DNA of 64,000 nucleotides, from positions 372,001 through 436,000 of the IMG/VR virus record IMGVR_UViG_3300024239_000011; one strand, given 5' to 3'. The position numbers and the translations under genes were made by a program. The notes under the pieces are model-generated. The model was not told the origin of the DNA and made no database searches. It saw nothing but the letters and a program-made list of their open reading frames with translations. Position 1 is the stretch's first letter; each line of letters starts with the position of its first letter. This document shows, piece by piece, positions 47,447-64,000 of the stretch.

Positions 47447-49645
47447 TTAATTGATCTCCAAACCAGTAATTGCTTGGTTTTTTGCAAGACGGAAACGAAC
47501 CAATATTGCGCTATTGACTGAATTTGACGAGGTTTCCTCACCAAAGAAAGCAATAAAACGTCCAGAAGTTCCGTTAGCTGGGGTACCGAATGCACAACCC
47601 GGAGAATTAACCCCTCGATCAGGAACACCAATACCGTCATAACGCCGATACAAGTCCCACCATCCATTGAGGGTATTATTTAACCCCTGAATACCCGGCA
47701 ACATGACCCACATTCCTGCATAAGTTCCCTCAACATGTATCTTGATGGATGAACATGCACGACGCCGCAACATAAAGGTGGCATATTGAGGTGCATGTGG
47801 TGGGCGCGTAGAAAAATCTGGACCTTCTGGGAGATACTGGGTGTAGTCAGTAAGGTCGTGCTTCAATACACCACCAACAACCGATGCGGCGGCAGAAGAG
47901 ATTTCCCGAGCCGGTTCCCATGGTGCCGACAGTAGCAACCCGATTTCACCGGTACTAACCACTGGTGTGTCTTCATCATGACTTATATTAACACGCATTG
48001 CATGAGCAACGGCATCTGCGGGGATTTCGCCTAATGCTGGGTCAACCTTAACATTCGTTTCTGTAATCACACCACCAAGCCCAACGGCGGGTTCACCCGA
48101 CATAATCAGAAGTTTCTTTGGTGCCACTGCCCATGGACTATTACCAAGCGGCAGCCGAACTCTGGTACGAATTTCCGCCTCCGTATGCACATCACCAGAA
48201 ACCACAAACTCAAGCCCACTTTGGCTGTAAGTAGGCATATGGCTCGGTAGCACAGCGGGGAGATTGTATTGTCCAGGGTCAATAAATACCGGATCACCAA
48301 CTACCGGCTCCGTGCTAATTTCCATAACACCCTTGTCGTAAAACACATTTGTCGAAAGATTGAAACCAGTGACACTTGCCGTTAGCGTTGAATTCTCGGT
48401 GTAATGCGGAATACCACTTGAATGAACAATGTTCGGTAATGAGGGGGCGATGGTATTAAAAGTCGCGGATGGAACCTCGATGACTTCATCCACAACGAAC
48501 AGTACCTCGTTCGTCTCACCCGAGGCAGTATGAAGCATTTTCATGGAGTTCAATCCAGCTTGAACCGTGGTCGCGATTCCCGCAGTCAGCGACTTATGGA
48601 AACCGGGTTTGTCAGCGGGGAAGTCAGGATTATCAATGATAGTAAGTGCGCCATCGGTCGTTACATTATCACCAGACCCAAGTGTAACAACACCCGCAAT
48701 ATTACCATTGATAATTGCTTGAACATCACCTGAATTACCCGGTCCAAAATTAGTAACTGGAAGCGAAGTAACCTCGCCGGATGCAACGGCGGTAACAGGG
48801 GTACCACCAGCAAGTGGGACACTACCAGAATTATTGATAACACCATCACAAATTACAACATTCGCACCATCCAACCCACTGATACTATCCTCAATTACTA
48901 AGGTTTTGGATGATAACGGTGCTGGCGGCGCGGGCACAAGCAGCCCCAGGATTTCGTTTAAGTCATCAAGTGCATCTACAATACGAGTTGCAGCAGTCCA
49001 TGATTGTATAGCCGGTTGACTTCCTTCTACACGACCATTACTCCAAAGCCCATCGGTAGGAATACCAATCATGTCACCGACGCTTGATGGATCACCACTA
49101 TTAGTGCCACCAGAGCCAACTCCCTTGGTGCCAATGTAACGGCACCCCTCAATGTAGATATCCACCACCCCATTTGGTAAATTGTTCGGGAAGTGTAGGA
49201 CACCAGCTTGGTAGTCAAATACCCACTCTTCATTATTAGTCAATGCGTTTAAGACAACCCCGCCAGCAGAAGGAATGCCCTTATAAACCTTTAGCATATA
49301 ACTAGGGTCTACCGATGGCGGAATCCAGTCAGTGATACGGTTGGCCTTTTCCATTGGGTTGCCAGTTGAACTGACCACGGCAATCCATGTCTTATTCCCA
49401 CTGACAGTTGGATCGGCAACACATTTAATCGCCTTCGCCCCTTTCTGAACGACAACAACTGTGGTATCAGTAGCAGGGGCAGCGGTTGGAATTTGATCCG
49501 CTTGTGCCCATACCTGATTACCGAAAACCGGTAACGGCGACCCAATAGATTCGTTAGAACCATCCTTACTCGCGGTCGTCTCGGTGACGCCGTACATGAT
49601 CTTCTTCCAGAGGAAGTCCAGTTTCTTTTGATCAGCAATGGACAT
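47447..49645 (-). CDS. Virion structural protein, KK.DFLWK family member 2
   Basis: MSIADQKKLDFLWKKIMYG; shares C-terminal modules with the next two genes. Confidence 0.8.
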   Translation of the reverse strand: MSIADQKKLDFLWKKIMYGVTETTASKDGSNESIGSPLPVFGNQVWAQADQIPTAAPATDTTVVVVQKGAKAIKCVADPTVSGNKTWIAVVSSTGNPMEKANRITDWIPPSVDPSYMLKVYKGIPSAGGVVLNALTNNEEWVFDYQAGVLHFPNNLPNGVVDIYIEGCRYIGTKGVGSGGTNSGDPSSVGDMIGIPTDGLWSNGRVEGSQPAIQSWTAATRIVDALDDLNEILGLLVPAPPAPLSSKTLVIEDSISGLDGANVVICDGVINNSGSVPLAGGTPVTAVASGEVTSLPVTNFGPGNSGDVQAIINGNIAGVVTLGSGDNVTTDGALTIIDNPDFPADKPGFHKSLTAGIATTVQAGLNSMKMLHTASGETNEVLFVVDEVIEVPSATFNTIAPSLPNIVHSSGIPHYTENSTLTASVTGFNLSTNVFYDKGVMEISTEPVVGDPVFIDPGQYNLPAVLPSHMPTYSQSGLEFVVSGDVHTEAEIRTRVRLPLGNSPWAVAPKKLLIMSGEPAVGLGGVITETNVKVDPALGEIPADAVAHAMRVNISHDEDTPVVSTGEIGLLLSAPWEPAREISSAAASVVGGVLKHDLTDYTQYLPEGPDFSTRPPHAPQYATFMLRRRACSSIKIHVEGTYAGMWVMLPGIQGLNNTLNGWWDLYRRYDGIGVPDRGVNSPGCAFGTPANGTSGRFIAFFGEETSSNSVNSAILVRFRLAKNQAITGLEIN

Positions 49646-49649
49646 TTAC

Positions 49650-51800
49650 TTACACCCCAATGAAGCTCAAACCAGTAATCGCCTTGCCCGCAGTGAGCGA
49701 AAAACGAACCAGAATAATGTTGTTTGTTGAATTTGTACTGGATTGGGTACCGAACGTCACCCGCACCTGTCCGGTGGACCCGGTGGCAACTGCCCCCATG
49801 GCACACCCAGCACCATTAGACCCAACGTCAGGCACGCCAGCACCATCATAAAGCTGTTTAGCTGACCACCAGCCATTCAGCGTATTCTTGGTCGTTATGC
49901 CAGGAAGTTTCACCCATAGCCCATCATAAGTACCAGTTACGTCAATGACAAAACCTGATTGGGCACGACGGCGGAACATGAAAGTTATGTATTGGGTCGC
50001 TGCTCGTCCACTCAGATTCGGTCCAGGGGGCAAATACCCAGTGCTATAATCGGTCGCATCATGTTTTAATATCCCGCCGACAACAACCGCATCCCATGCC
50101 TGTAATGCCGCTGATGAAACCCAATCAGGTGTTATCAAATTAACATCACCAGCCGGGGTATCCGTATTGCCTAAAATAATACGACCCGCATTACCACCAG
50201 TTGGGTTCGTACCCATATTCGTCACCGCAATCGATGTTTCACGGATGCCTGTAGTTGGAGTACCGGTCATTACGTTAACCTTGAGCGACGATGTATTCCA
50301 TTGCCCATCGCCCGCCGGATTACGCCCACGAACGCGCACATTAGCGGTAGTATGTACCGATCCCCCGATAGTGAATACTTGATCGAAGATGTTTTGATTG
50401 GGCAAATCCTTAGTGAATACCGCAGGCATTCCCGCATTACCCGGTCCAATATCCACCTGGGTACCAATGGTCGGGACACTTCCAATTTGGATGTTGCTTT
50501 TTGAAAGATACGTTAACCCAGCCAATTTCGATACAGTAGCTCCAACCTTCAGTGTTGCCCCCGCACCGTAATGCGGAATACTGCTGCTGTATGACAAAGT
50601 ACCAGCGGTTCCCTCTGCCACGGTTAACGCTGTAGTGGACGGAATATCAATACGATCATCATACACAAAGAATACTTCATTCGTGGCGCCACCATCGGTA
50701 TGACTCATGCGGAACTTGTTTAGCCCCGCCGGTATAGATGATGTTATTTTAGCACTCAACGCACGCCAGAACCCAGGTTTATCGGTCGGGTAGTCTATAT
50801 CCGCAGTGACAATAAGGGAGCCATAGGTACCACTTTTGTCCGTATTATCTATAACGACCTTACCACTCTCCGTGCCATTCACCAGGGCAGCTAATGTTCC
50901 GCTAATCCCACTACCAAAACCGGTTAGCGCAGTTGTACTCGCAGTTGCCGCCGCAATACGGTAAATCTTGGTTCCACTTGCAGGACTTCCACCACCAGTA
51001 TTGTCCACCGTGCCTTCTGCAAGCAGGATATTTTCCGAGCCAACTGCATCGGCACCCCCGGTCATCACCAAGGTCAATGTGCTGAGATTTGGTGGTGGGG
51101 AAGGAAGCAACTTTCCAAGTAATTCATTAAGATCATCAAGTGCATCAACAACTTTTGTAGATGAATTCCAGTTTTTAATTGCAGCATTTTGATCCAACGA
51201 CCCATCAGTAGGTGTACCTAGGGTAATACCATCAGCCGTACCAGACCCCCCAGTACCTCCCGCTGAAATACCACGTCGTCCAACGTACTTATAACCAATG
51301 ACATATACATCAGATGTTGCCAATGCTGATGGGATATTGTTTGGAAAATGCAAAACGCCTGCTGCATAGTCAAACACCCACTCTTCGTTATTAGTCAATT
51401 GATTTAGCTGTTTTCCACCGGCATTTGGATCACCCGCATACACCTTGATCTGGTAGCTGGGATGAATAATAGGGGGAACCCAATCCATATGACGATTGGT
51501 TGCAAGAAAAGGACTTGTTGTGGCATCAATAACGGTAATCCATGTTCGGCGCTCGGTTACGGTGGAATCGACTGCACACTTAACTGCCACCGACTGCCCG
51601 AAGAATTGCACTACCCCCTGGGTAGCACCGGGCGCGGGTGATGGAATTTGATCACTTTCAGACCATAACTGACTTTGCAAGACGACCGGTGCCGATGATA
51701 TGAACTCGTTCGGCGCCGCTTTATTCACGTCCGTCTCAGTACGGGAGAAAATAGTTCGCTTCCAAAGGAAATCTACTTTCTTATCGGTATTGATTGCCAT
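49650..51800 (-). CDS. Virion structural protein, KK.DFLWK family member 3
   Basis: MAINTDKKVDFLWKRTIFS; DALDDLNE, SSIPHY, NGWW, ILVRF. Confidence 0.8.
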   Translation of the reverse strand: MAINTDKKVDFLWKRTIFSRTETDVNKAAPNEFISSAPVVLQSQLWSESDQIPSPAPGATQGVVQFFGQSVAVKCAVDSTVTERRTWITVIDATTSPFLATNRHMDWVPPIIHPSYQIKVYAGDPNAGGKQLNQLTNNEEWVFDYAAGVLHFPNNIPSALATSDVYVIGYKYVGRRGISAGGTGGSGTADGITLGTPTDGSLDQNAAIKNWNSSTKVVDALDDLNELLGKLLPSPPPNLSTLTLVMTGGADAVGSENILLAEGTVDNTGGGSPASGTKIYRIAAATASTTALTGFGSGISGTLAALVNGTESGKVVIDNTDKSGTYGSLIVTADIDYPTDKPGFWRALSAKITSSIPAGLNKFRMSHTDGGATNEVFFVYDDRIDIPSTTALTVAEGTAGTLSYSSSIPHYGAGATLKVGATVSKLAGLTYLSKSNIQIGSVPTIGTQVDIGPGNAGMPAVFTKDLPNQNIFDQVFTIGGSVHTTANVRVRGRNPAGDGQWNTSSLKVNVMTGTPTTGIRETSIAVTNMGTNPTGGNAGRIILGNTDTPAGDVNLITPDWVSSAALQAWDAVVVGGILKHDATDYSTGYLPPGPNLSGRAATQYITFMFRRRAQSGFVIDVTGTYDGLWVKLPGITTKNTLNGWWSAKQLYDGAGVPDVGSNGAGCAMGAVATGSTGQVRVTFGTQSSTNSTNNIILVRFSLTAGKAITGLSFIGV

Positions 51801-60149: not shown

Positions 60150-60450
60150 TCATTTCCTCCAACAGTTCTTCGAACGGACGCATCCTGGGATGCCCCCGAG
60201 GGTTCGATCTGGATTTATCGAAGCCCCGCTGTGAGGAACAAAATGAAACCTATTGCATTCTTGTCCGCTTGGTCAAGGATTTTTATTTACGGCTACAGTT
60301 GAAAACTTGAAATTGTATTTCGTATATACTCCCGCTTGCAATCCACCAAAGAAATCAGAGGAAGACCGGAATGATACTACCTAGCGTATGCTATATAGAA
60401 TCATGGCGAGCAGAGATTCGTTAATCTCTGCTCGCCATGACGATAAAGCG

Positions 60451-60735
60451 TTAATGGATGAGGTCAGGATTACCGGGATGGAAGTTGGCAATTTCATAGT
60501 CCGCAGGGGAAATCCAGCCGACATACCCCCACGGGGTCGAAATCACGATGTCACTCCCTCGGCATCCAACAACCCGCCCGATAAGCGGCTTGATCACTGG
60601 ACACGCCGTCCCGCCCACCAGAACCGTCGTCAACGTGACCCGCACGAACACACCGTCCAGCGCGATACCCAGATAATTCGACTCGTTGTTACCAGCGCCA
60701 AATACGGTGACATCTGATGAAATAGTTGGTTGCAT
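60451..60735 (-). CDS. Hypothetical protein with hairpin-occluded SD
   Basis: 94-aa ORF; TTGATT-N17-TATACT at 60762-60790. Confidence 0.55.
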   Translation of the reverse strand: MQPTISSDVTVFGAGNNESNYLGIALDGVFVRVTLTTVLVGGTACPVIKPLIGRVVGCRGSDIVISTPWGYVGWISPADYEIANFHPGNPDLIH

Positions 60736-60740
60736 GGCTT

Positions 60741-60790
60741 GTGCCCCTGCTTATTTTGAATAGTATAGCAGGGGCACGAAGTAAAATCAA
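60741..60790 (-). promoter_or_regulatory. Sigma70-like promoter overlapping an 11-bp inverted repeat that covers the SD
   Basis: gtgcccctgct (60741-60751) / agcaggggcac (60767-60777). Confidence 0.65.
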
Positions 60791-60999
60791 GTCAGTGCCA
60801 GTTCGTCCCGGATTTCCAAAGCACGTTTTTCTATCCATGGATGCAGTATATCTTTGGCTTTACGGGCATCATTCACCCATAGTGCGTTCATAACCTGTTC
60901 CAGCGGTTCCTTGGTGTCATCCGGAAACGGCGCAGGCAGATCGCCGGAAGTCCACCACATCCAGCTTTTCTTGAATCGTGCCTTGATTTGCTCAAACAT
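60787..60999 (-). CDS. Hypothetical protein
   Basis: Start MFEQIK overlaps the clpA stop. Confidence 0.55.
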   Translation of the reverse strand: MFEQIKARFKKSWMWWTSGDLPAPFPDDTKEPLEQVMNALWVNDARKAKDILHPWIEKRALEIRDELALT

Positions 61000-63274
61000 C
61001 GTACTTGAACTCCAACTCATTATTGCTTACGCCGATGACGACTGTTCCGCCCTTAACCAGCTTACCGAACAACATTTCACGGGAGAGCGGCTTTTTCACA
61101 TACTGCTGGATTACGCGCGCCAACGGTCGCGCACCCATCTTCGGATCATAGCCTTCCCGCGCCAACCACCGCTTGGCAGGCATGTTCACCACGACCTTAA
61201 CCCGGTTCTCCTGGCTCAAATCGTTTAGTTCGTTGATGAACTTGGTAACGACCTTCAACATGTCAGGTTCGGTCAGCGCCCGGTACTTAACAATGGCATC
61301 CAAGCGATTACGGAATTCCGGCTTGAACCGTTCGTTGATCACTTTGTCTTCTGCGCCGCTCCGGTCATCGCTGGCAGTGAAACCAATAGAGTTCTTTTGT
61401 AGCTCCGTGGCGCCCGCATTCGAGGTCATGATCAGATAGACGTTTCGGAAATCGACTTCCTTCCCGCTACCGCTGGTCAGCTTACCGGTGTCCATGACCT
61501 GTAGGAAAAGATCATAGATATCCGGATGCGCCTTCTCGATTTCATCAAGCAACAGCACGCAATGCGGCGTCTTTTCAATCATGTTGATCAGTACACCGGA
61601 CCCCGCATTCCCATCCTCGTACCCAACGTAGCCAGGGCGCCCACCGATCAACGTGGCAGCCGCATGTTTTTCCTGATACTCGGACATGTTCAAGCGCACC
61701 AATTCGATCCCGAGGGTCGCGGCAAGCTGAACTGCTGTCTCGGTCTTGCCAACGCCCGTTGGACCGGCGAAAAGGTAGCATCCAAGCGGCTTGCGCTTGT
61801 CCCGAAGCCCGGCGCGGCTCTGGTACACAGCATCAATCAAGGTGTCAATAGCACGGTCCTGCCCGAACACCACCCCTTTCAAATCCTTTTCAAGACGTGA
61901 AAGACGCTTAATGTCGTCGTCCTTAACCGATTTTGGCGGAATTTTGGCAATGCGAGCAACCTGCTGCTCGATTTCAAAAACTCCAATAATCTTCTTCCGC
62001 TTGGTAGGAGGTTTGACCCGTTCCGCCGCCCCCGCTGCATCCATCACATCAATTGCCTTGTCAGGTAAGAAGCGCCCATGGACATACCGAACCGTCAAAT
62101 CTACCGCAGCCTGTAAAGCTTCATTCTGATATACAACCCCGTGATAACCCTCATAATGATCTTTTAGACCCTGAAGAATTTGTACCGCATCGGTCGAGCT
62201 TGGTTCAAACACATCCACCCGATGGAAACAACGATTGAATGTTCGATCTTTCTGAAAATACTTACGATCATCCTGATAAGTCGTGCTACCGATGGTCTGA
62301 ATTTCACCCCGATTCAAATACGGCGCTAGAATATTGGCAATGGATGGTCCACCCTCACCACCCGACACACTGGTCATGTGAATATTGTCGATCACAAGAA
62401 CCGCATGCGGCTTAGTCAGGAGAGCATTGATCACCAACTTCAGGCGTTCTTCAAATTCACCTCGGAATTTAGCGCCTGCGATCAACGACGGAAGGTCAAG
62501 CTGGTATAGCACCGCATCTTTTATGGTATCCGGAACATCCCCATTCACAATCTTCTTGGCAATACCCTCAAGGATCGCAGTCTTCCCAACACCAGCTTCC
62601 CCCAACAATAATGCGCTGTTCTTGCGGCGACGCGCCAGGATGCTAATTACCGTTGCTATTTCGTTCTCACGACCAACCAACGGGTCAATTTTTCCCGCCT
62701 TGGCAAGATCATTGAGATTGATACACAGCGCCTTGAGAATTTGATCAGTCTTGCTTTCTGCGGCTGGTTTTTGAGTAGGAGACGGAAGACGACCATATTC
62801 CGAATTTACGGTATCAGTTGGTACCGCACTCAGCGAACTATCAGCAAGATATTGTATTAAACGAAAATGATCCAAACCGAATGCAGCACATATAGTTGTC
62901 GAATGACAATCGTCTTCGGTAAGAATAGCAACCAAAATATCTTTACATCGAAGGGTATCCCGCCCAGATGACAGACATTGCACCACGGTACGATGCTTCA
63001 CCCGTTCTAGTGCGGGAGTTTGACCCGGTATATTTTTAATTACTCTTGTGGGAATAACACCAGAATTCAAATATTCATCAAGTACATCCCGCATACCATC
63101 AATATCAATTCCTAGATCATCTAAAATATCGATAATGTCGTCCTCTTCTAAAAGAGAACGGAGTACATGTTCAGTAGTAACGATTTCATGACGCAACCGC
63201 TGTGCAATATTATAAGCTCTCTGAATTGGAGCAACAACCAGTTGATGGTTTACTTCTATACTAGAAACAGACAT
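60992..63274 (-). CDS. clpA: ClpA-like AAA+ unfoldase
   Basis: Clp N-domain, IDPLVGRE, GEAGVGKT, GPTGVGKT, GYVG, LLLDEIEK, IGF loop, GAR; no ClpB middle domain. Confidence 0.93.
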   Translation of the reverse strand: MSVSSIEVNHQLVVAPIQRAYNIAQRLRHEIVTTEHVLRSLLEEDDIIDILDDLGIDIDGMRDVLDEYLNSGVIPTRVIKNIPGQTPALERVKHRTVVQCLSSGRDTLRCKDILVAILTEDDCHSTTICAAFGLDHFRLIQYLADSSLSAVPTDTVNSEYGRLPSPTQKPAAESKTDQILKALCINLNDLAKAGKIDPLVGRENEIATVISILARRRKNSALLLGEAGVGKTAILEGIAKKIVNGDVPDTIKDAVLYQLDLPSLIAGAKFRGEFEERLKLVINALLTKPHAVLVIDNIHMTSVSGGEGGPSIANILAPYLNRGEIQTIGSTTYQDDRKYFQKDRTFNRCFHRVDVFEPSSTDAVQILQGLKDHYEGYHGVVYQNEALQAAVDLTVRYVHGRFLPDKAIDVMDAAGAAERVKPPTKRKKIIGVFEIEQQVARIAKIPPKSVKDDDIKRLSRLEKDLKGVVFGQDRAIDTLIDAVYQSRAGLRDKRKPLGCYLFAGPTGVGKTETAVQLAATLGIELVRLNMSEYQEKHAAATLIGGRPGYVGYEDGNAGSGVLINMIEKTPHCVLLLDEIEKAHPDIYDLFLQVMDTGKLTSGSGKEVDFRNVYLIMTSNAGATELQKNSIGFTASDDRSGAEDKVINERFKPEFRNRLDAIVKYRALTEPDMLKVVTKFINELNDLSQENRVKVVVNMPAKRWLAREGYDPKMGARPLARVIQQYVKKPLSREMLFGKLVKGGTVVIGVSNNELEFKYDV

Positions 63275-63337
63275 ACCTTAACCTTTAAAGCCTAGGACTC
63301 TTAGGTTAAGGTATGTCTGATCTATTTGTACTGTCAA
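63268..63337 (-). promoter_or_regulatory. Sigma70-like promoter overlapping a 17-bp perfect inverted repeat that covers the clpA SD and ATG
   Basis: cagacataccttaacct (63268-63284) / aggttaaggtatgtctg (63303-63319); TTGACA-N18-TACCTT (63308-63337). Confidence 0.75.
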
Positions 63338-63341
63338 TTTA

Positions 63342-63848
63342 TTAGGGCAGCGAATTCTTGATGCTATTGACATCCCGGATTGCCTGCTCCGTGATGGAGC
63401 GGCAGTCGCCCACGTTAGCGCCGTCGTAGCGCACCATTCGCACATCGCGAATGGCAACGTTGACGATCATAACGATCTCGCGCTCGATCTCATGGACAGA
63501 AGCGTGGTCGATGTAGCCGACGCCACCCGTGGGATTGTCGTAGTCCACCCCACGACCGGTCGGGGAGAAGGTTTGATGCCGGGCGTAAAGGTGCGCCAAC
63601 GCATCCTGGCTGGTGTTGTGCAAGTCCATCAACATGTCTTGACACGACCGATTATTCTCATAAAGCGCGGGTTGTCCATTCCCGCCCATGACCCCGGTGC
63701 GCTTGGCTTCCCAGCAGGCGCGGTCGTAGATATCGCAGGCAGCATGTGCCGGGCTGGTAGACAGGATCAGAGCAGATGCGGCAACCAGAGCCGTCGCCGC
63801 AGCGAGGATCACCAGACGATAGTTGGTCATGGCAGAAACGCGGGTCAT
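63342..63848 (-). CDS. Exported hypothetical protein
   Basis: Signal peptide ending AHA; four Cys; SD AGGAGG; TTGACA-N17-TAGAAT at 63876-63904. Confidence 0.7.
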   Translation of the reverse strand: MTRVSAMTNYRLVILAAATALVAASALILSTSPAHAACDIYDRACWEAKRTGVMGGNGQPALYENNRSCQDMLMDLHNTSQDALAHLYARHQTFSPTGRGVDYDNPTGGVGYIDHASVHEIEREIVMIVNVAIRDVRMVRYDGANVGDCRSITEQAIRDVNSIKNSLP

Positions 63849-64000
63849 GGTGTCCTCCTTCAAACCTATAATTGCATTCTACCCGTTTGAAGTGGTCATG
63901 TCAACCATGTCTACGAATGATTGGGACGTATAAGTTCTCGGTACTTCCTAAGAACTAACTTTTGTTCATCAGTTAGGTTGGTTGGCACTGTAATTTCAAT

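What the first reader, a model, noticed from the sequence alone, without database searches (positions are those of the whole stretch)
63268..63337. 17-bp perfect hairpin hides the clpA SD and ATG unless transcription starts at the overlapping promoter
Seen: the minus strand reads TTGACA-N13-[CAGACATACCTTAACCT]-N18-[AGGTTAAGGT ATG TCTG]. The candidate -10 (TACCTT) lies inside arm 1, so RNA from this promoter would lack the inhibitory arm, while read-through RNA would be blocked. Established: T4 uses this logic with late promoters (gene e, soc, I-TevI). Inference: here it is paired with a sigma70-type promoter and insulates a dangerous protease subunit from read-through.
Basis: partly seen in the sequence, partly recalled or inferred. 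Interest (0 to 1): 0.6.

Follow-up and report, generated by a model that had tools for sequence, protein, structure and literature searches.

The report
Promoter-split hairpin masking phage clpA start
In a 543-kb T4-like jumbo phage, a perfect 17-bp hairpin buries the ribosome-binding site and start codon of a ClpA-like gene on read-through RNA. A sigma70-type promoter inside the hairpin's first arm should make an unblocked RNA, which is the known T4 trick, and this phage uses it at about two dozen genes.

Summary
On the minus strand, arm 1 (63319-63303) and arm 2 (63284-63268) are perfectly complementary over 17 bp. About 0.001 such repeats are expected by chance in this genome. Arm 2 holds the Shine-Dalgarno AGG and the only possible ATG of a 760-aa ClpA-like ORF.

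TTGACA-N18-TACCTT puts the -10 inside arm 1 and the predicted start about 2 nt past it.

The genome clearly uses such promoters: 63 TTGACA-N16-18-TAnnnT sites against about 9 for permuted hexamers. Opening the ribosome site costs about 30 kcal/mol on a long leader and about 7 on the short one, which ranks 3rd of 213 genes.

The design recurs. 24 promoter-proximal genes have strong split hairpins, at both sigma70-type and TAAATA (gp55-type late) promoters. 22 of the 24 lie behind a co-directional neighbour (p = 6e-6), and two are homing endonuclease genes, as in T4. The same pipeline recovers T4 genes 49, I-TevII, e and segB.

No start site or expression data exist, and no relative is close enough for covariation. 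The "dangerous protease" rationale is unsupported.

Verdict: a new member of the known T4-type mechanism.

The parts
63332..63337 (-). -35 hexamer TTGACA of the clpA promoter, beginning 5 nt after the upstream ORF's stop codon (63344-63342; a second in-frame TAA follows at 63341-63339)
   Evidence: A perfect TTGACA 16-18 nt upstream of a TAnnnT occurs 63 times in the genome, against a mean of 8.7 for permuted hexamers.
63308..63313 (-). -10 hexamer TACCTT (18-nt spacer), lying wholly inside arm 1. It is the reverse complement of the AAGGTA that runs from 63279 into the start codon.
   Evidence: It matches TATAAT at only 3 of 6 positions, so the generic scan does not list it. TACCCT, TATCCT and TATCTT occur among this genome's TTGACA promoters.
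63300..63302 (-). Predicted transcription start (7 +/- 1 nt after the -10), just 3' of arm 1. This is inferred, not mapped.
   Evidence: Leaders starting at 63302-63298 fold at about -11 kcal/mol with the start region largely open.
63303..63319 (-). Arm 1 (17 nt), the anti-RBS/anti-AUG strand. It is present only on RNA that starts upstream.
   Evidence: The sequence is unique in the genome at up to 2 mismatches.
63285..63302 (-). 18-nt loop containing an inner 6-bp helix (63301-63296 with 63292-63287, two G.U pairs) and a CUA triloop
   Evidence: The inner helix forms only in the sense RNA: the 116-nt sense fold is -40.5 kcal/mol and the antisense fold is -34.2.
63268..63284 (-). Arm 2 (17 nt), containing the AGG of the Shine-Dalgarno AAAGG (63286-63282), the ATG (63274-63272) and 4 nt of coding sequence
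63258..63331 (-). Full extended hairpin, including the outer pairs 63324-63321 with 63265-63262 and 63331-63328 with 63261-63258
   Evidence: A natural variant in run X3 (A>T at 63267 on the plus strand; Val3Asp) adds a U63320-A63267 pair, extending the main stem to 18 bp and reducing the gap to the outer helix to a 1-nt bulge. The fold goes from -40.5 to -42.4 kcal/mol.
60992..63274 (-). ClpA-like AAA+ unfoldase gene (760 aa)
   Evidence: Pfam Clp_N, AAA_lid_9, AAA_2 and ClpB_D2-small. phrog_4871 'ATP-dependent protease', E = 7.5e-239. Two GxxGxGKT motifs and an IGF tripeptide.
63342..63848 (-). Upstream co-directional GC-rich ORF (168 aa, no family hit), the likely source of read-through RNA
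   Evidence: No terminator-like site lies between it and clpA.
63876..63904 (-). Strong sigma70-type promoter TTGACA-N17-TAGAAT driving the upstream ORF
   Evidence: 11 of 12 matches.
60741..60790 (-). Second example of the same design in the window, in front of the 94-aa ORF 60451-60735. It comprises TTGATT-N17-TATACT (60790-60762, with TG before the -10), arm 1 60777-60767, and arm 2 60751-60741 covering the Shine-Dalgarno AGGGG.

Best explanation
The element is a cis-acting translational insulator of the T4 type.

Transcripts that enter clpA from upstream carry both arms. One source is the strong promoter at 63904, reading through the GC-rich ORF. These RNAs fold into a helix of about 30 bp that buries the Shine-Dalgarno sequence and the AUG, so ClpA is not made from them.

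The gene's own sigma70-type promoter (TTGACA-N18-TACCTT) has its -10 inside arm 1 and should start RNA about 2 nt past that arm. This RNA has a leader of about 27 nt without the inhibitory strand and is translatable. ClpA synthesis is therefore tied to the activity of its own, probably early and host-sigma70-dependent, promoter.

What is shown: the repeat, its position over the start site, the promoter-like site, the energetics and the genome-wide pattern. What is inferred: the start site, the existence of read-through RNA, the translational block, and the early timing.

The device is not specific to clpA. This phage uses it at about two dozen genes, at both sigma70-type and gp55-type (TAAATA) promoters.
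For: - Repeat: 17/17 perfect inverted repeat over the Shine-Dalgarno and ATG. The fold is -40.5 kcal/mol, z = -6.75.
- Promoter class: real in this genome, 63 sites against 8.7 for permuted hexamers. The -10 end typically lies 20-45 nt from the ATG, and 33 nt here. Given a TAnnnT, a perfect TTGACA at 16-18 nt is expected in about 1 in 1000 cases.
- Accessibility: opening positions -15 to +4 costs 29.7 kcal/mol on a 100-nt leader and 7.1 from the predicted start, rank 3 of 213.
- Own upstream region versus RBS: across 702 called genes, duplexes of -24 kcal/mol or stronger number 15 against 1.7 expected from permuted pairs.
- Promoter-aligned test: the untranscribed 45 nt upstream of the start pairs with the gene's own RBS at -18 kcal/mol or stronger in 12 of 97 sigma70-type genes (2.3 expected) and 16 of 116 TAAATA genes (2.6 expected).
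- Context: strong split hairpins occur at 22 of 106 genes with a co-directional upstream neighbour and 2 of 107 with a divergent one, p = 6e-6. With gaps matched at 40-150 nt the counts are 17/67 and 1/65, p = 5e-5.
- Geometry: only 1 of 24 has a U-rich tail, and the median loop is 14.5 nt.
- Sequence diversity: the arm sequences are unrelated between genes, and the clpA arm is unique. This points to RNA complementarity, not a shared protein site.
- Strand asymmetry: the inner helix uses G.U pairs that exist only in the sense RNA.
- Natural variant: a variant in run X3 lengthens the stem.
- T4 control: the same pipeline ranks 49, I-TevII, e and segB at 6th, 8th, 11th and 13th of 157 genes.
- T4-like biology: the phage encodes a gp55-family late sigma, and two GIY-YIG homing endonuclease genes carry late-promoter hairpins, as in T4 (PMC2988022).
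Against: - No start-site, RNA or protein data exist. Only DNA runs hold the sequence.
- The -10 is weak (3 of 6 matches), and the 18-nt spacer is the minority class, 8 of 63.
- TACCTT is forced by complementarity to AAGGTA, so it is not independent evidence for a promoter.
- Both clpA and the upstream ORF have sigma70-type promoters, so the temporal logic of T4 (early RNA blocked, late RNA open) does not obviously apply.
- None of 39 distant clpA homologues has such a hairpin, and no close relative was found, so there is no covariation.
- Gene calls and start-site offsets come from my own simple rules.
- 17 perfect pairs without a mismatch would also fit a young repeat or a DNA-level repeat.
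Confidence: 0.65

Rival explanations
1. The hairpin mainly acts on the upstream message, as a weak terminator, a 3'-end stabiliser or an RNase III processing site for the RNA of the GC-rich ORF. Overlap with the clpA start would then be a consequence of tight packing. If RNase III cuts the helix of about 23 bp, it would also cut through the clpA start region, making the silencing of read-through RNA irreversible.
For: The helix is long and nearly continuous (17 + 6 bp, plus outer pairs) with a triloop. This is about the length RNase III needs, by general knowledge. It sits 22 nt after the upstream stop, and UUUCU follows it. Split hairpins occur in co-directional gaps, where 3'-end elements also belong.
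Against: The scan finds no terminator-like site in 60300-64000. This genome's evident terminators are GC-rich, have short loops and are flanked by A/T runs, unlike this stem, which is 38-41% GC. The X3 variant removes the first U of the tail while lengthening the stem. Only 1 of the 24 strong split hairpins has a U-rich tail. This reading also does not explain why the 3' arms are aligned on the Shine-Dalgarno and AUG.
Confidence: 0.15
2. All clpA transcripts start upstream of arm 1, because the TTGACA/TACCTT site is not used. The hairpin would then be a constitutive translational lock that needs a trans-acting opener, such as a helicase, a small RNA, a nuclease cut or translational coupling.
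For: The -10 is weak, and its sequence is dictated by the stem.
Against: A perfect TTGACA sits at correct spacing in a genome where that arrangement is about 7-fold over-represented. The same geometry, with the predicted start between the arms, holds in all 24 strong cases. A lock of -30 kcal/mol is too stable for a thermometer-type switch.
Confidence: 0.1
3. The repeat is a DNA operator. A phage or host repressor would bind the two 17-bp half-sites, which cover the -10 and positions +18 to +34, and shut the promoter off.
For: The complementarity is perfect with no wobble in the 17-bp arms, and the repeat overlaps the promoter.
Against: The half-sites are 35 bp apart centre to centre, which is unusual for dimeric repressors by general knowledge. 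The arm occurs nowhere else in 543 kb at up to 2 mismatches. Other promoter-split repeats in the genome share no sequence except anti-Shine-Dalgarno pyrimidines. The flanking helices rely on G.U pairs and are strand-specific.
Confidence: 0.05
4. The repeat is a functionless by-product, such as a recent local inverted duplication or a recombination scar left by insertion of the GC-rich ORF.
For: The GC-rich ORF looks foreign: 58-61% GC against 37-46% in the flanks. It has near-identical copies in other metagenomes. The repeat is perfect.
Against: The repeat is placed exactly on the Shine-Dalgarno and ATG and exactly around a promoter. The genome-wide excess and the context dependence argue for selection. 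The repeat is maintained in four runs of the source study, and the only change nearby strengthens it.
Confidence: 0.05

Closest known systems
T4 gene e (lysozyme), soc, 49 and I-TevI: inhibitory hairpins with a late promoter inside (PMC3014915, section 29)
   Same: The Shine-Dalgarno and/or AUG sit in the 3' strand of a helix. The 5' strand is encoded in or just upstream of the gene's own promoter, so promoter-proximal RNA lacks it and is translated, while longer RNA is blocked (100-fold for e). My pipeline finds 49 and e in T4 with the same score that finds clpA here.
   Different: Those promoters are gp55-type late promoters (TATAAATA), and the blocked RNAs are early or middle. Here the promoter is TTGACA-N18-TAnnnT, and the likely read-through source is another sigma70-type promoter. 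The stem is also much stronger: 17 perfect bp at about -30 kcal/mol, against -15 to -18 kcal/mol duplex energy in the AT-rich T4 cases.
T4 I-TevII/I-TevIII, segB and Aeh1 mobE: homing endonuclease hairpins with middle or late promoters (PMC2988022, section 12)
   Same: The architecture is the same. These cases show that the promoter class inside the hairpin is not restricted to late promoters. This phage also has two GIY-YIG endonuclease genes with such hairpins.
   Different: clpA is not a mobile-element gene. MotA-type middle promoters lack a -35 TTGACA (general knowledge).
T4 early-promoter leaders of nrdC.8, regB, modB and denV (my own control)
   Same: In each, GTTTAC-N16/17-TAnnnT has a spacer or -10 complementary to the downstream Shine-Dalgarno. 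This is the closest structural match to the clpA case, with a sigma70-type promoter split by an anti-RBS hairpin.
   Different: This was seen only computationally here. I did not find it described in the reviews I could read. The review says only that regB has a typical early promoter and is autoregulated by RegB cleavage.
Intrinsic terminators and RNase III sites between phage genes (for example T7 and lambda; general knowledge)
   Same: A long intercistronic hairpin directly after a stop codon.
   Different: There is no U-tract or GC-rich stem. The 3' strand is the next gene's ribosome site, and a promoter sits in the 5' strand.

Membership tests
T4-type promoter-in-hairpin translational control | The Shine-Dalgarno and/or start codon lie in the 3' strand of a stable helix on long transcripts | tested here: met
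   17-bp perfect stem over the AGG of the Shine-Dalgarno and the ATG. Fold -40.5 kcal/mol, z = -6.75. Opening energy 29.7 kcal/mol.
T4-type promoter-in-hairpin translational control | A promoter is positioned so that its transcripts lack the 5' strand (sequence prediction) | tested here: met
   TTGACA-N18-TACCTT has its -10 inside arm 1, and the predicted start at 63300-63302 is 1-3 nt past arm 1. The promoter class is validated genome-wide.
T4-type promoter-in-hairpin translational control | Mapped 5' ends between the arms | not testable with these tools
   No RNA run holds the phage. All holders are DNA contigs.
T4-type promoter-in-hairpin translational control | Longer transcripts from upstream promoters read into the gene | tested here: inconclusive
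   A co-directional ORF with an 11/12-match promoter ends 5 nt before the -35, and no terminator-like site lies between them. Genome-wide, the hairpins are tied to co-directional neighbours. Transcripts were not observed.
T4-type promoter-in-hairpin translational control | The internal promoter is of the late (gp55, TATAAATA) class | tested here: not met
   There is no TAAATA between 63345 and 63274. The promoter is sigma70-type. This is not strictly defining, since I-TevII/III use middle promoters (PMC2988022). 16 of the 24 strong cases elsewhere in this genome do use TAAATA.
T4-type promoter-in-hairpin translational control | Translation is reduced on long RNA and relieved by disrupting the 5' strand | not testable with these tools
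   This needs reporter or toeprint assays.
Rho-independent terminator | GC-rich stem, loop of 3-8 nt, U-tract | tested here: not met
   The scan found 0 terminator-like sites in 60300-64000. The arm is 38-41% GC, and the tail has 4 U in 8 nt.
Palindromic repressor operator | Closely spaced half-sites, usually recurring at other regulated promoters | tested here: not met
   The half-site centres are 35 bp apart. There is no second copy in 543 kb at up to 2 mismatches.
Known RNA families (Rfam 15) | A match to a curated covariance model | tested here: not met
   No match at E <= 1 in 60300-64000.
ClpA-type class I AAA+ unfoldase | Clp_N domain, two AAA+ modules, a D2-small domain and a ClpP-docking IG[FL] loop | tested here: met
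   Pfam hits, an IGF tripeptide and two Walker A motifs. A phage ClpP gene is present at genome 368671-369258.

The most novel reading that the evidence does not exclude
Promoter-embedded anti-RBS hairpins may be a general grammar of T4-superfamily phages, not a curiosity of a few late genes. A tenth or more of promoter-proximal cistrons, at early sigma70-type promoters as well as late ones, would be translatable only from their own promoter. Polycistronic read-through RNA would be systematically silent for them. This would apply to T4 itself (nrdC.8, regB, modB, denV) and to this distant 543-kb phage.
Probability: 0.4. Interest if true: 0.6.

Novelty: new member of a known kind. Interest (0 to 1): 0.4.

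Why it matters
If confirmed, the T4 read-through-silencing hairpin is conserved as a design principle in an uncultivated subsurface jumbo phage that is very distant from T4. It would also be used widely there, at about 24 strong cases, and at sigma70-type promoters, not only at late ones.

For annotation, it means that the presence of a gene on a phage polycistronic RNA does not imply that the gene is translated.

For engineering, promoter/anti-RBS pairs of this kind are compact natural insulators. For clpA itself, it predicts that the phage's unfoldase is made only while its own promoter is active.

Tried and rejected
- **Covariation in relatives.** The best ClpA homologues are only 49% identical or less in IMG/VR, 50% or less in named phages and 49% or less in metagenome contigs. 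None of the 39 homologues with a usable start has a comparable hairpin, and the counts equal expectation. So there is no comparative support and no contradiction. One fetched locus (L140) comes from a human-gut metagenome assembly. It is a microbial contig and was not used further.
- **Expression data.** Only DNA contigs hold the phage. The wastewater 'RNA-Seq' runs hold only unrelated conserved Clp pieces and a fragment of the GC-rich ORF.
- **Rfam.** Nothing was found.
- **Plasmid and phage DNA similarity.** No near relatives were found.
- **T4 gp55 as a single-sequence query.** It found nothing. The PHROG profiles did find a late sigma.
- **Origin of the GC-rich ORF.** It has no Pfam or PHROG family and no relative in species-representative genomes.
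- **RNA thermometer.** Rejected, because the stem is far too stable.
- **MITE or mobile-element ends.** Rejected, because the arm is unique.
- **Alternative start codon for clpA.** Rejected, because there is none in frame.
- **soc control.** soc is not recovered by my duplex score in T4 (rank 60 of 157), so the score misses some true cases.
Full report
**What the window is.** The window is bases 372001-436000 of a single 543,035-bp IMG/VR virus record with 48.7% GC, rated complete. It comes from subsurface metagenomes. It carries a tail sheath, an M15 peptidase and many unknown genes. The nearest named phages by ClpA are Agrobacterium phage Atu_ph07, Sinorhizobium phage Phosso and Pseudomonas phage PA5oct, at 42-50% identity.

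**The observation.** All coordinates here are on the minus strand.
- TTGACA lies at 63337-63332 and is followed by 12 nt.
- Arm 1 is 63319-63303, the 18-nt loop is 63302-63285, and arm 2 is 63284-63268. The two arms are perfect complements.
- Arm 2 contains the AGG of the Shine-Dalgarno AAAGG (63286-63282) and the ATG at 63274-63272.
- That ATG is the only possible start of a 760-aa ORF. A TAA lies two codons upstream, and no other start codon precedes the conserved Clp_N helix.
- The ORF is a ClpA-type unfoldase with an IGF docking tripeptide. The phage also encodes ClpP, 66 kb away.

**Not chance.** A genome-wide scan found only nine perfect inverted repeats of 17 bp or more with loops of 3-40 nt. 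About 0.001 are expected by chance. As RNA the region folds at -40.5 kcal/mol with z = -6.75. The helix continues inside the loop as 6 bp with two G.U pairs and a CUA triloop, and it also continues outside the arms. Because of the G.U pairs, the sense RNA folds better than the antisense RNA, -40.5 against -34.2 kcal/mol.

**Is the promoter credible?**
- TTGACA-N16-18-TAnnnT occurs 63 times in the genome, against a mean of 8.7 (maximum 37) for permutations of the -35 hexamer. The spacing is 17 nt in 46 cases and 18 nt in 8.
- Most sites end 20-45 nt before a start codon that has a Shine-Dalgarno. The clpA site ends 33 nt before its ATG.
- The upstream GC-rich ORF has its own TTGACA-N17-TAGAAT.
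- The clpA -10, TACCTT, is weak, and the generic scan misses it. Similar hexamers do occur among the 63 sites.
- TACCTT is the reverse complement of AAGGTA, so the -10 and the segment from the AAGG at 63279-63276 to the start codon are literally each other's complement. The independent evidence for the promoter is therefore the perfect -35 at the right distance.
- A second upstream motif, TAAATA, is about 10-fold enriched in front of genes. The phage encodes a gp55-family late sigma. It therefore has T4-like early and late promoter classes.

**Energetics.** With a 100-nt leader, keeping positions -15 to +4 unpaired costs 29.7 kcal/mol. From the predicted start at -27 it costs 7.1 kcal/mol. The difference of 22.5 kcal/mol ranks third of 213 promoter-proximal genes. 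Leaders starting at 63302-63298 no longer contain the stem.

**The element is not unique.**
- The perfect-repeat list already shows other genes whose start site lies in the 3' arm and whose promoter lies in or next to the 5' arm.
- Across 702 called genes, the ribosome site pairs with its own upstream region far more often than with other genes' upstream regions. At -24 kcal/mol or stronger there are 15 cases against 1.7 expected. clpA ranks third.
- I then aligned on the predicted start and used only the 45 nt that the promoter itself does not transcribe. At -18 kcal/mol or stronger, the excess is 12 against 2.3 at sigma70-type promoters and 16 against 2.6 at TAAATA promoters.
- 24 genes lose 10 kcal/mol or more of opening energy on the short leader. 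In all 24, the predicted start lies between the arms.
- One further case lies in the window, at 60741-60790, in front of the 94-aa ORF two genes downstream of clpA (a 70-aa ORF lies between).

**A discriminating test.** If the purpose is to silence read-through, the hairpins should occur where read-through is possible.
- They do: 22 of 106 genes behind a co-directional neighbour have one, against 2 of 107 behind a divergent neighbour, p = 6e-6.
- The result holds when intergenic lengths are matched: 17 of 67 against 1 of 65, p = 5e-5.
- Terminators would show the same bias, which is a confound. However, only one of the 24 has a U-rich tail, loops are about 14 nt, and the scan finds no terminator in 60300-64000.
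- The arms share no motif beyond anti-Shine-Dalgarno pyrimidines, and the clpA arm is unique in the genome. This argues against a protein operator.

**Natural variation.** Run X3, from the same study, carries one change here, A>T at 63267 on the plus strand. It turns Val3 into Asp, pairs with U63320, and extends the main stem to 18 bp, joining it to the outer helix across a 1-nt bulge. The fold goes from -40.5 to -42.4 kcal/mol. This is a single event. It is compatible with selection for pairing and against a U-tract function.

**Positive control and literature.**
- In the first 100 kb of T4, the same pipeline ranks 49, I-TevII, e and segB at 6th, 8th, 11th and 13th of 157 genes. soc is missed at rank 60.
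- The mechanism is established for e, soc, 49 and I-TevI, and extended to I-TevII/III, segB and mobE (PMC3014915, section 29; PMC2988022, section 12).
- As in T4, two GIY-YIG homing endonuclease genes of this phage carry late-promoter hairpins.
- Unexpectedly, the top T4 hits also include the early-promoter genes nrdC.8, regB, modB and denV. In these, the GTTTAC-N16/17-TAnnnT spacer or -10 pairs with the Shine-Dalgarno. I found no description of this in the papers I could search.

**What remains open.**
- There is no RNA evidence.
- There is no close relative for covariation.
- There is no Rfam family.
- Both clpA and its upstream neighbour have sigma70-type promoters, so the benefit cannot be the simple early/late separation seen in T4. 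It may instead keep early genes silent on later read-through RNA, or set ClpA dosage independently of the strongly expressed foreign-looking ORF.
- The helix is long enough for RNase III, which could make the silencing irreversible. That is untested.

**Verdict.** The mechanism is well supported in silico. It is a new member of a known kind, and the wider pattern is moderately interesting.

Noticed in passing
window 60741-60790 (-), ORF 60451-60735 (-): The second ORF downstream of clpA (a 70-aa ORF at about 60787-60999 lies between) has the same design. It has TTGATT-N17-TATACT with TG before the -10, an 11-bp perfect repeat whose 5' arm ends in the -10, and a 3' arm that covers the Shine-Dalgarno AGGGG.
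   Followed up: partly
genome (G000:C1) starts 156655-, 533372+, 128661-, 56553+, 320942+, 62858-, 454624-, 534400+, 238937+ and others (list): 24 promoter-proximal genes have strong promoter-split anti-RBS hairpins: 8 at sigma70-type promoters and 16 at TAAATA promoters. 22 of them lie behind co-directional neighbours. The strongest is a 20-bp perfect repeat at 156654-156707.
   Followed up: yes
L162/L163 (T4 NC_000866): starts 53885 (nrdC.8), 62740 (regB), 13130 (modB), 65355 (denV), all minus strand: T4 early promoters (GTTTAC-N16/17-TAnnnT) whose spacer or -10 is complementary to the downstream Shine-Dalgarno. This is the same split-hairpin design at early promoters. It is not mentioned in the T4 reviews I could read.
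   Followed up: partly
window 63342-63848 (-): A 168-aa ORF at 58-61% GC sits between flanks of 37-46% GC. It has an N-terminal hydrophobic, signal-like segment and no family hit. A 39-kb, high-depth groundwater contig matches it at about 87% identity, and a wastewater contig matches 213 nt exactly. It is probably a recently acquired cellular or mobile gene with its own strong promoter.
   Followed up: partly
window 60401-60440: An 18-bp perfect inverted repeat with a 4-nt loop lies just after the 94-aa ORF. The run X3 contig lacks 60407-60440 (34 nt), a hairpin-collapsing deletion or an assembly artefact.
   Followed up: no
genome 258632-259477 (-); motif TAAATA genome-wide: A gp55-family late sigma factor is present (phrog_12791, E = 4e-83). 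A [C/A]TAAATA[C/T] motif is about 10-fold enriched within 80 nt upstream of genes. The phage has T4-type late promoters despite its great distance from T4.
   Followed up: partly
genome 453920-454624 (-) and 352966-353646 (+): Two GIY-YIG-type homing endonuclease genes each have a TAAATA promoter inside an RBS-sequestering hairpin, mirroring T4 I-TevI and segB.
   Followed up: partly
genome 368671-369258 (-) and 369364-370656 (-): A phage-encoded ClpP lies next to a DUF2201 putative metallopeptidase/VWA gene, 66 kb from clpA. No promoter of either class was predicted directly upstream.
   Followed up: no
window 47447-49645 (-) and 49650-51800 (-): Two adjacent paralogous genes of about 720 aa, both matching phrog_9417 and phrog_8578 (unknown function), lie next to a tail-sheath-like gene.
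   Followed up: no
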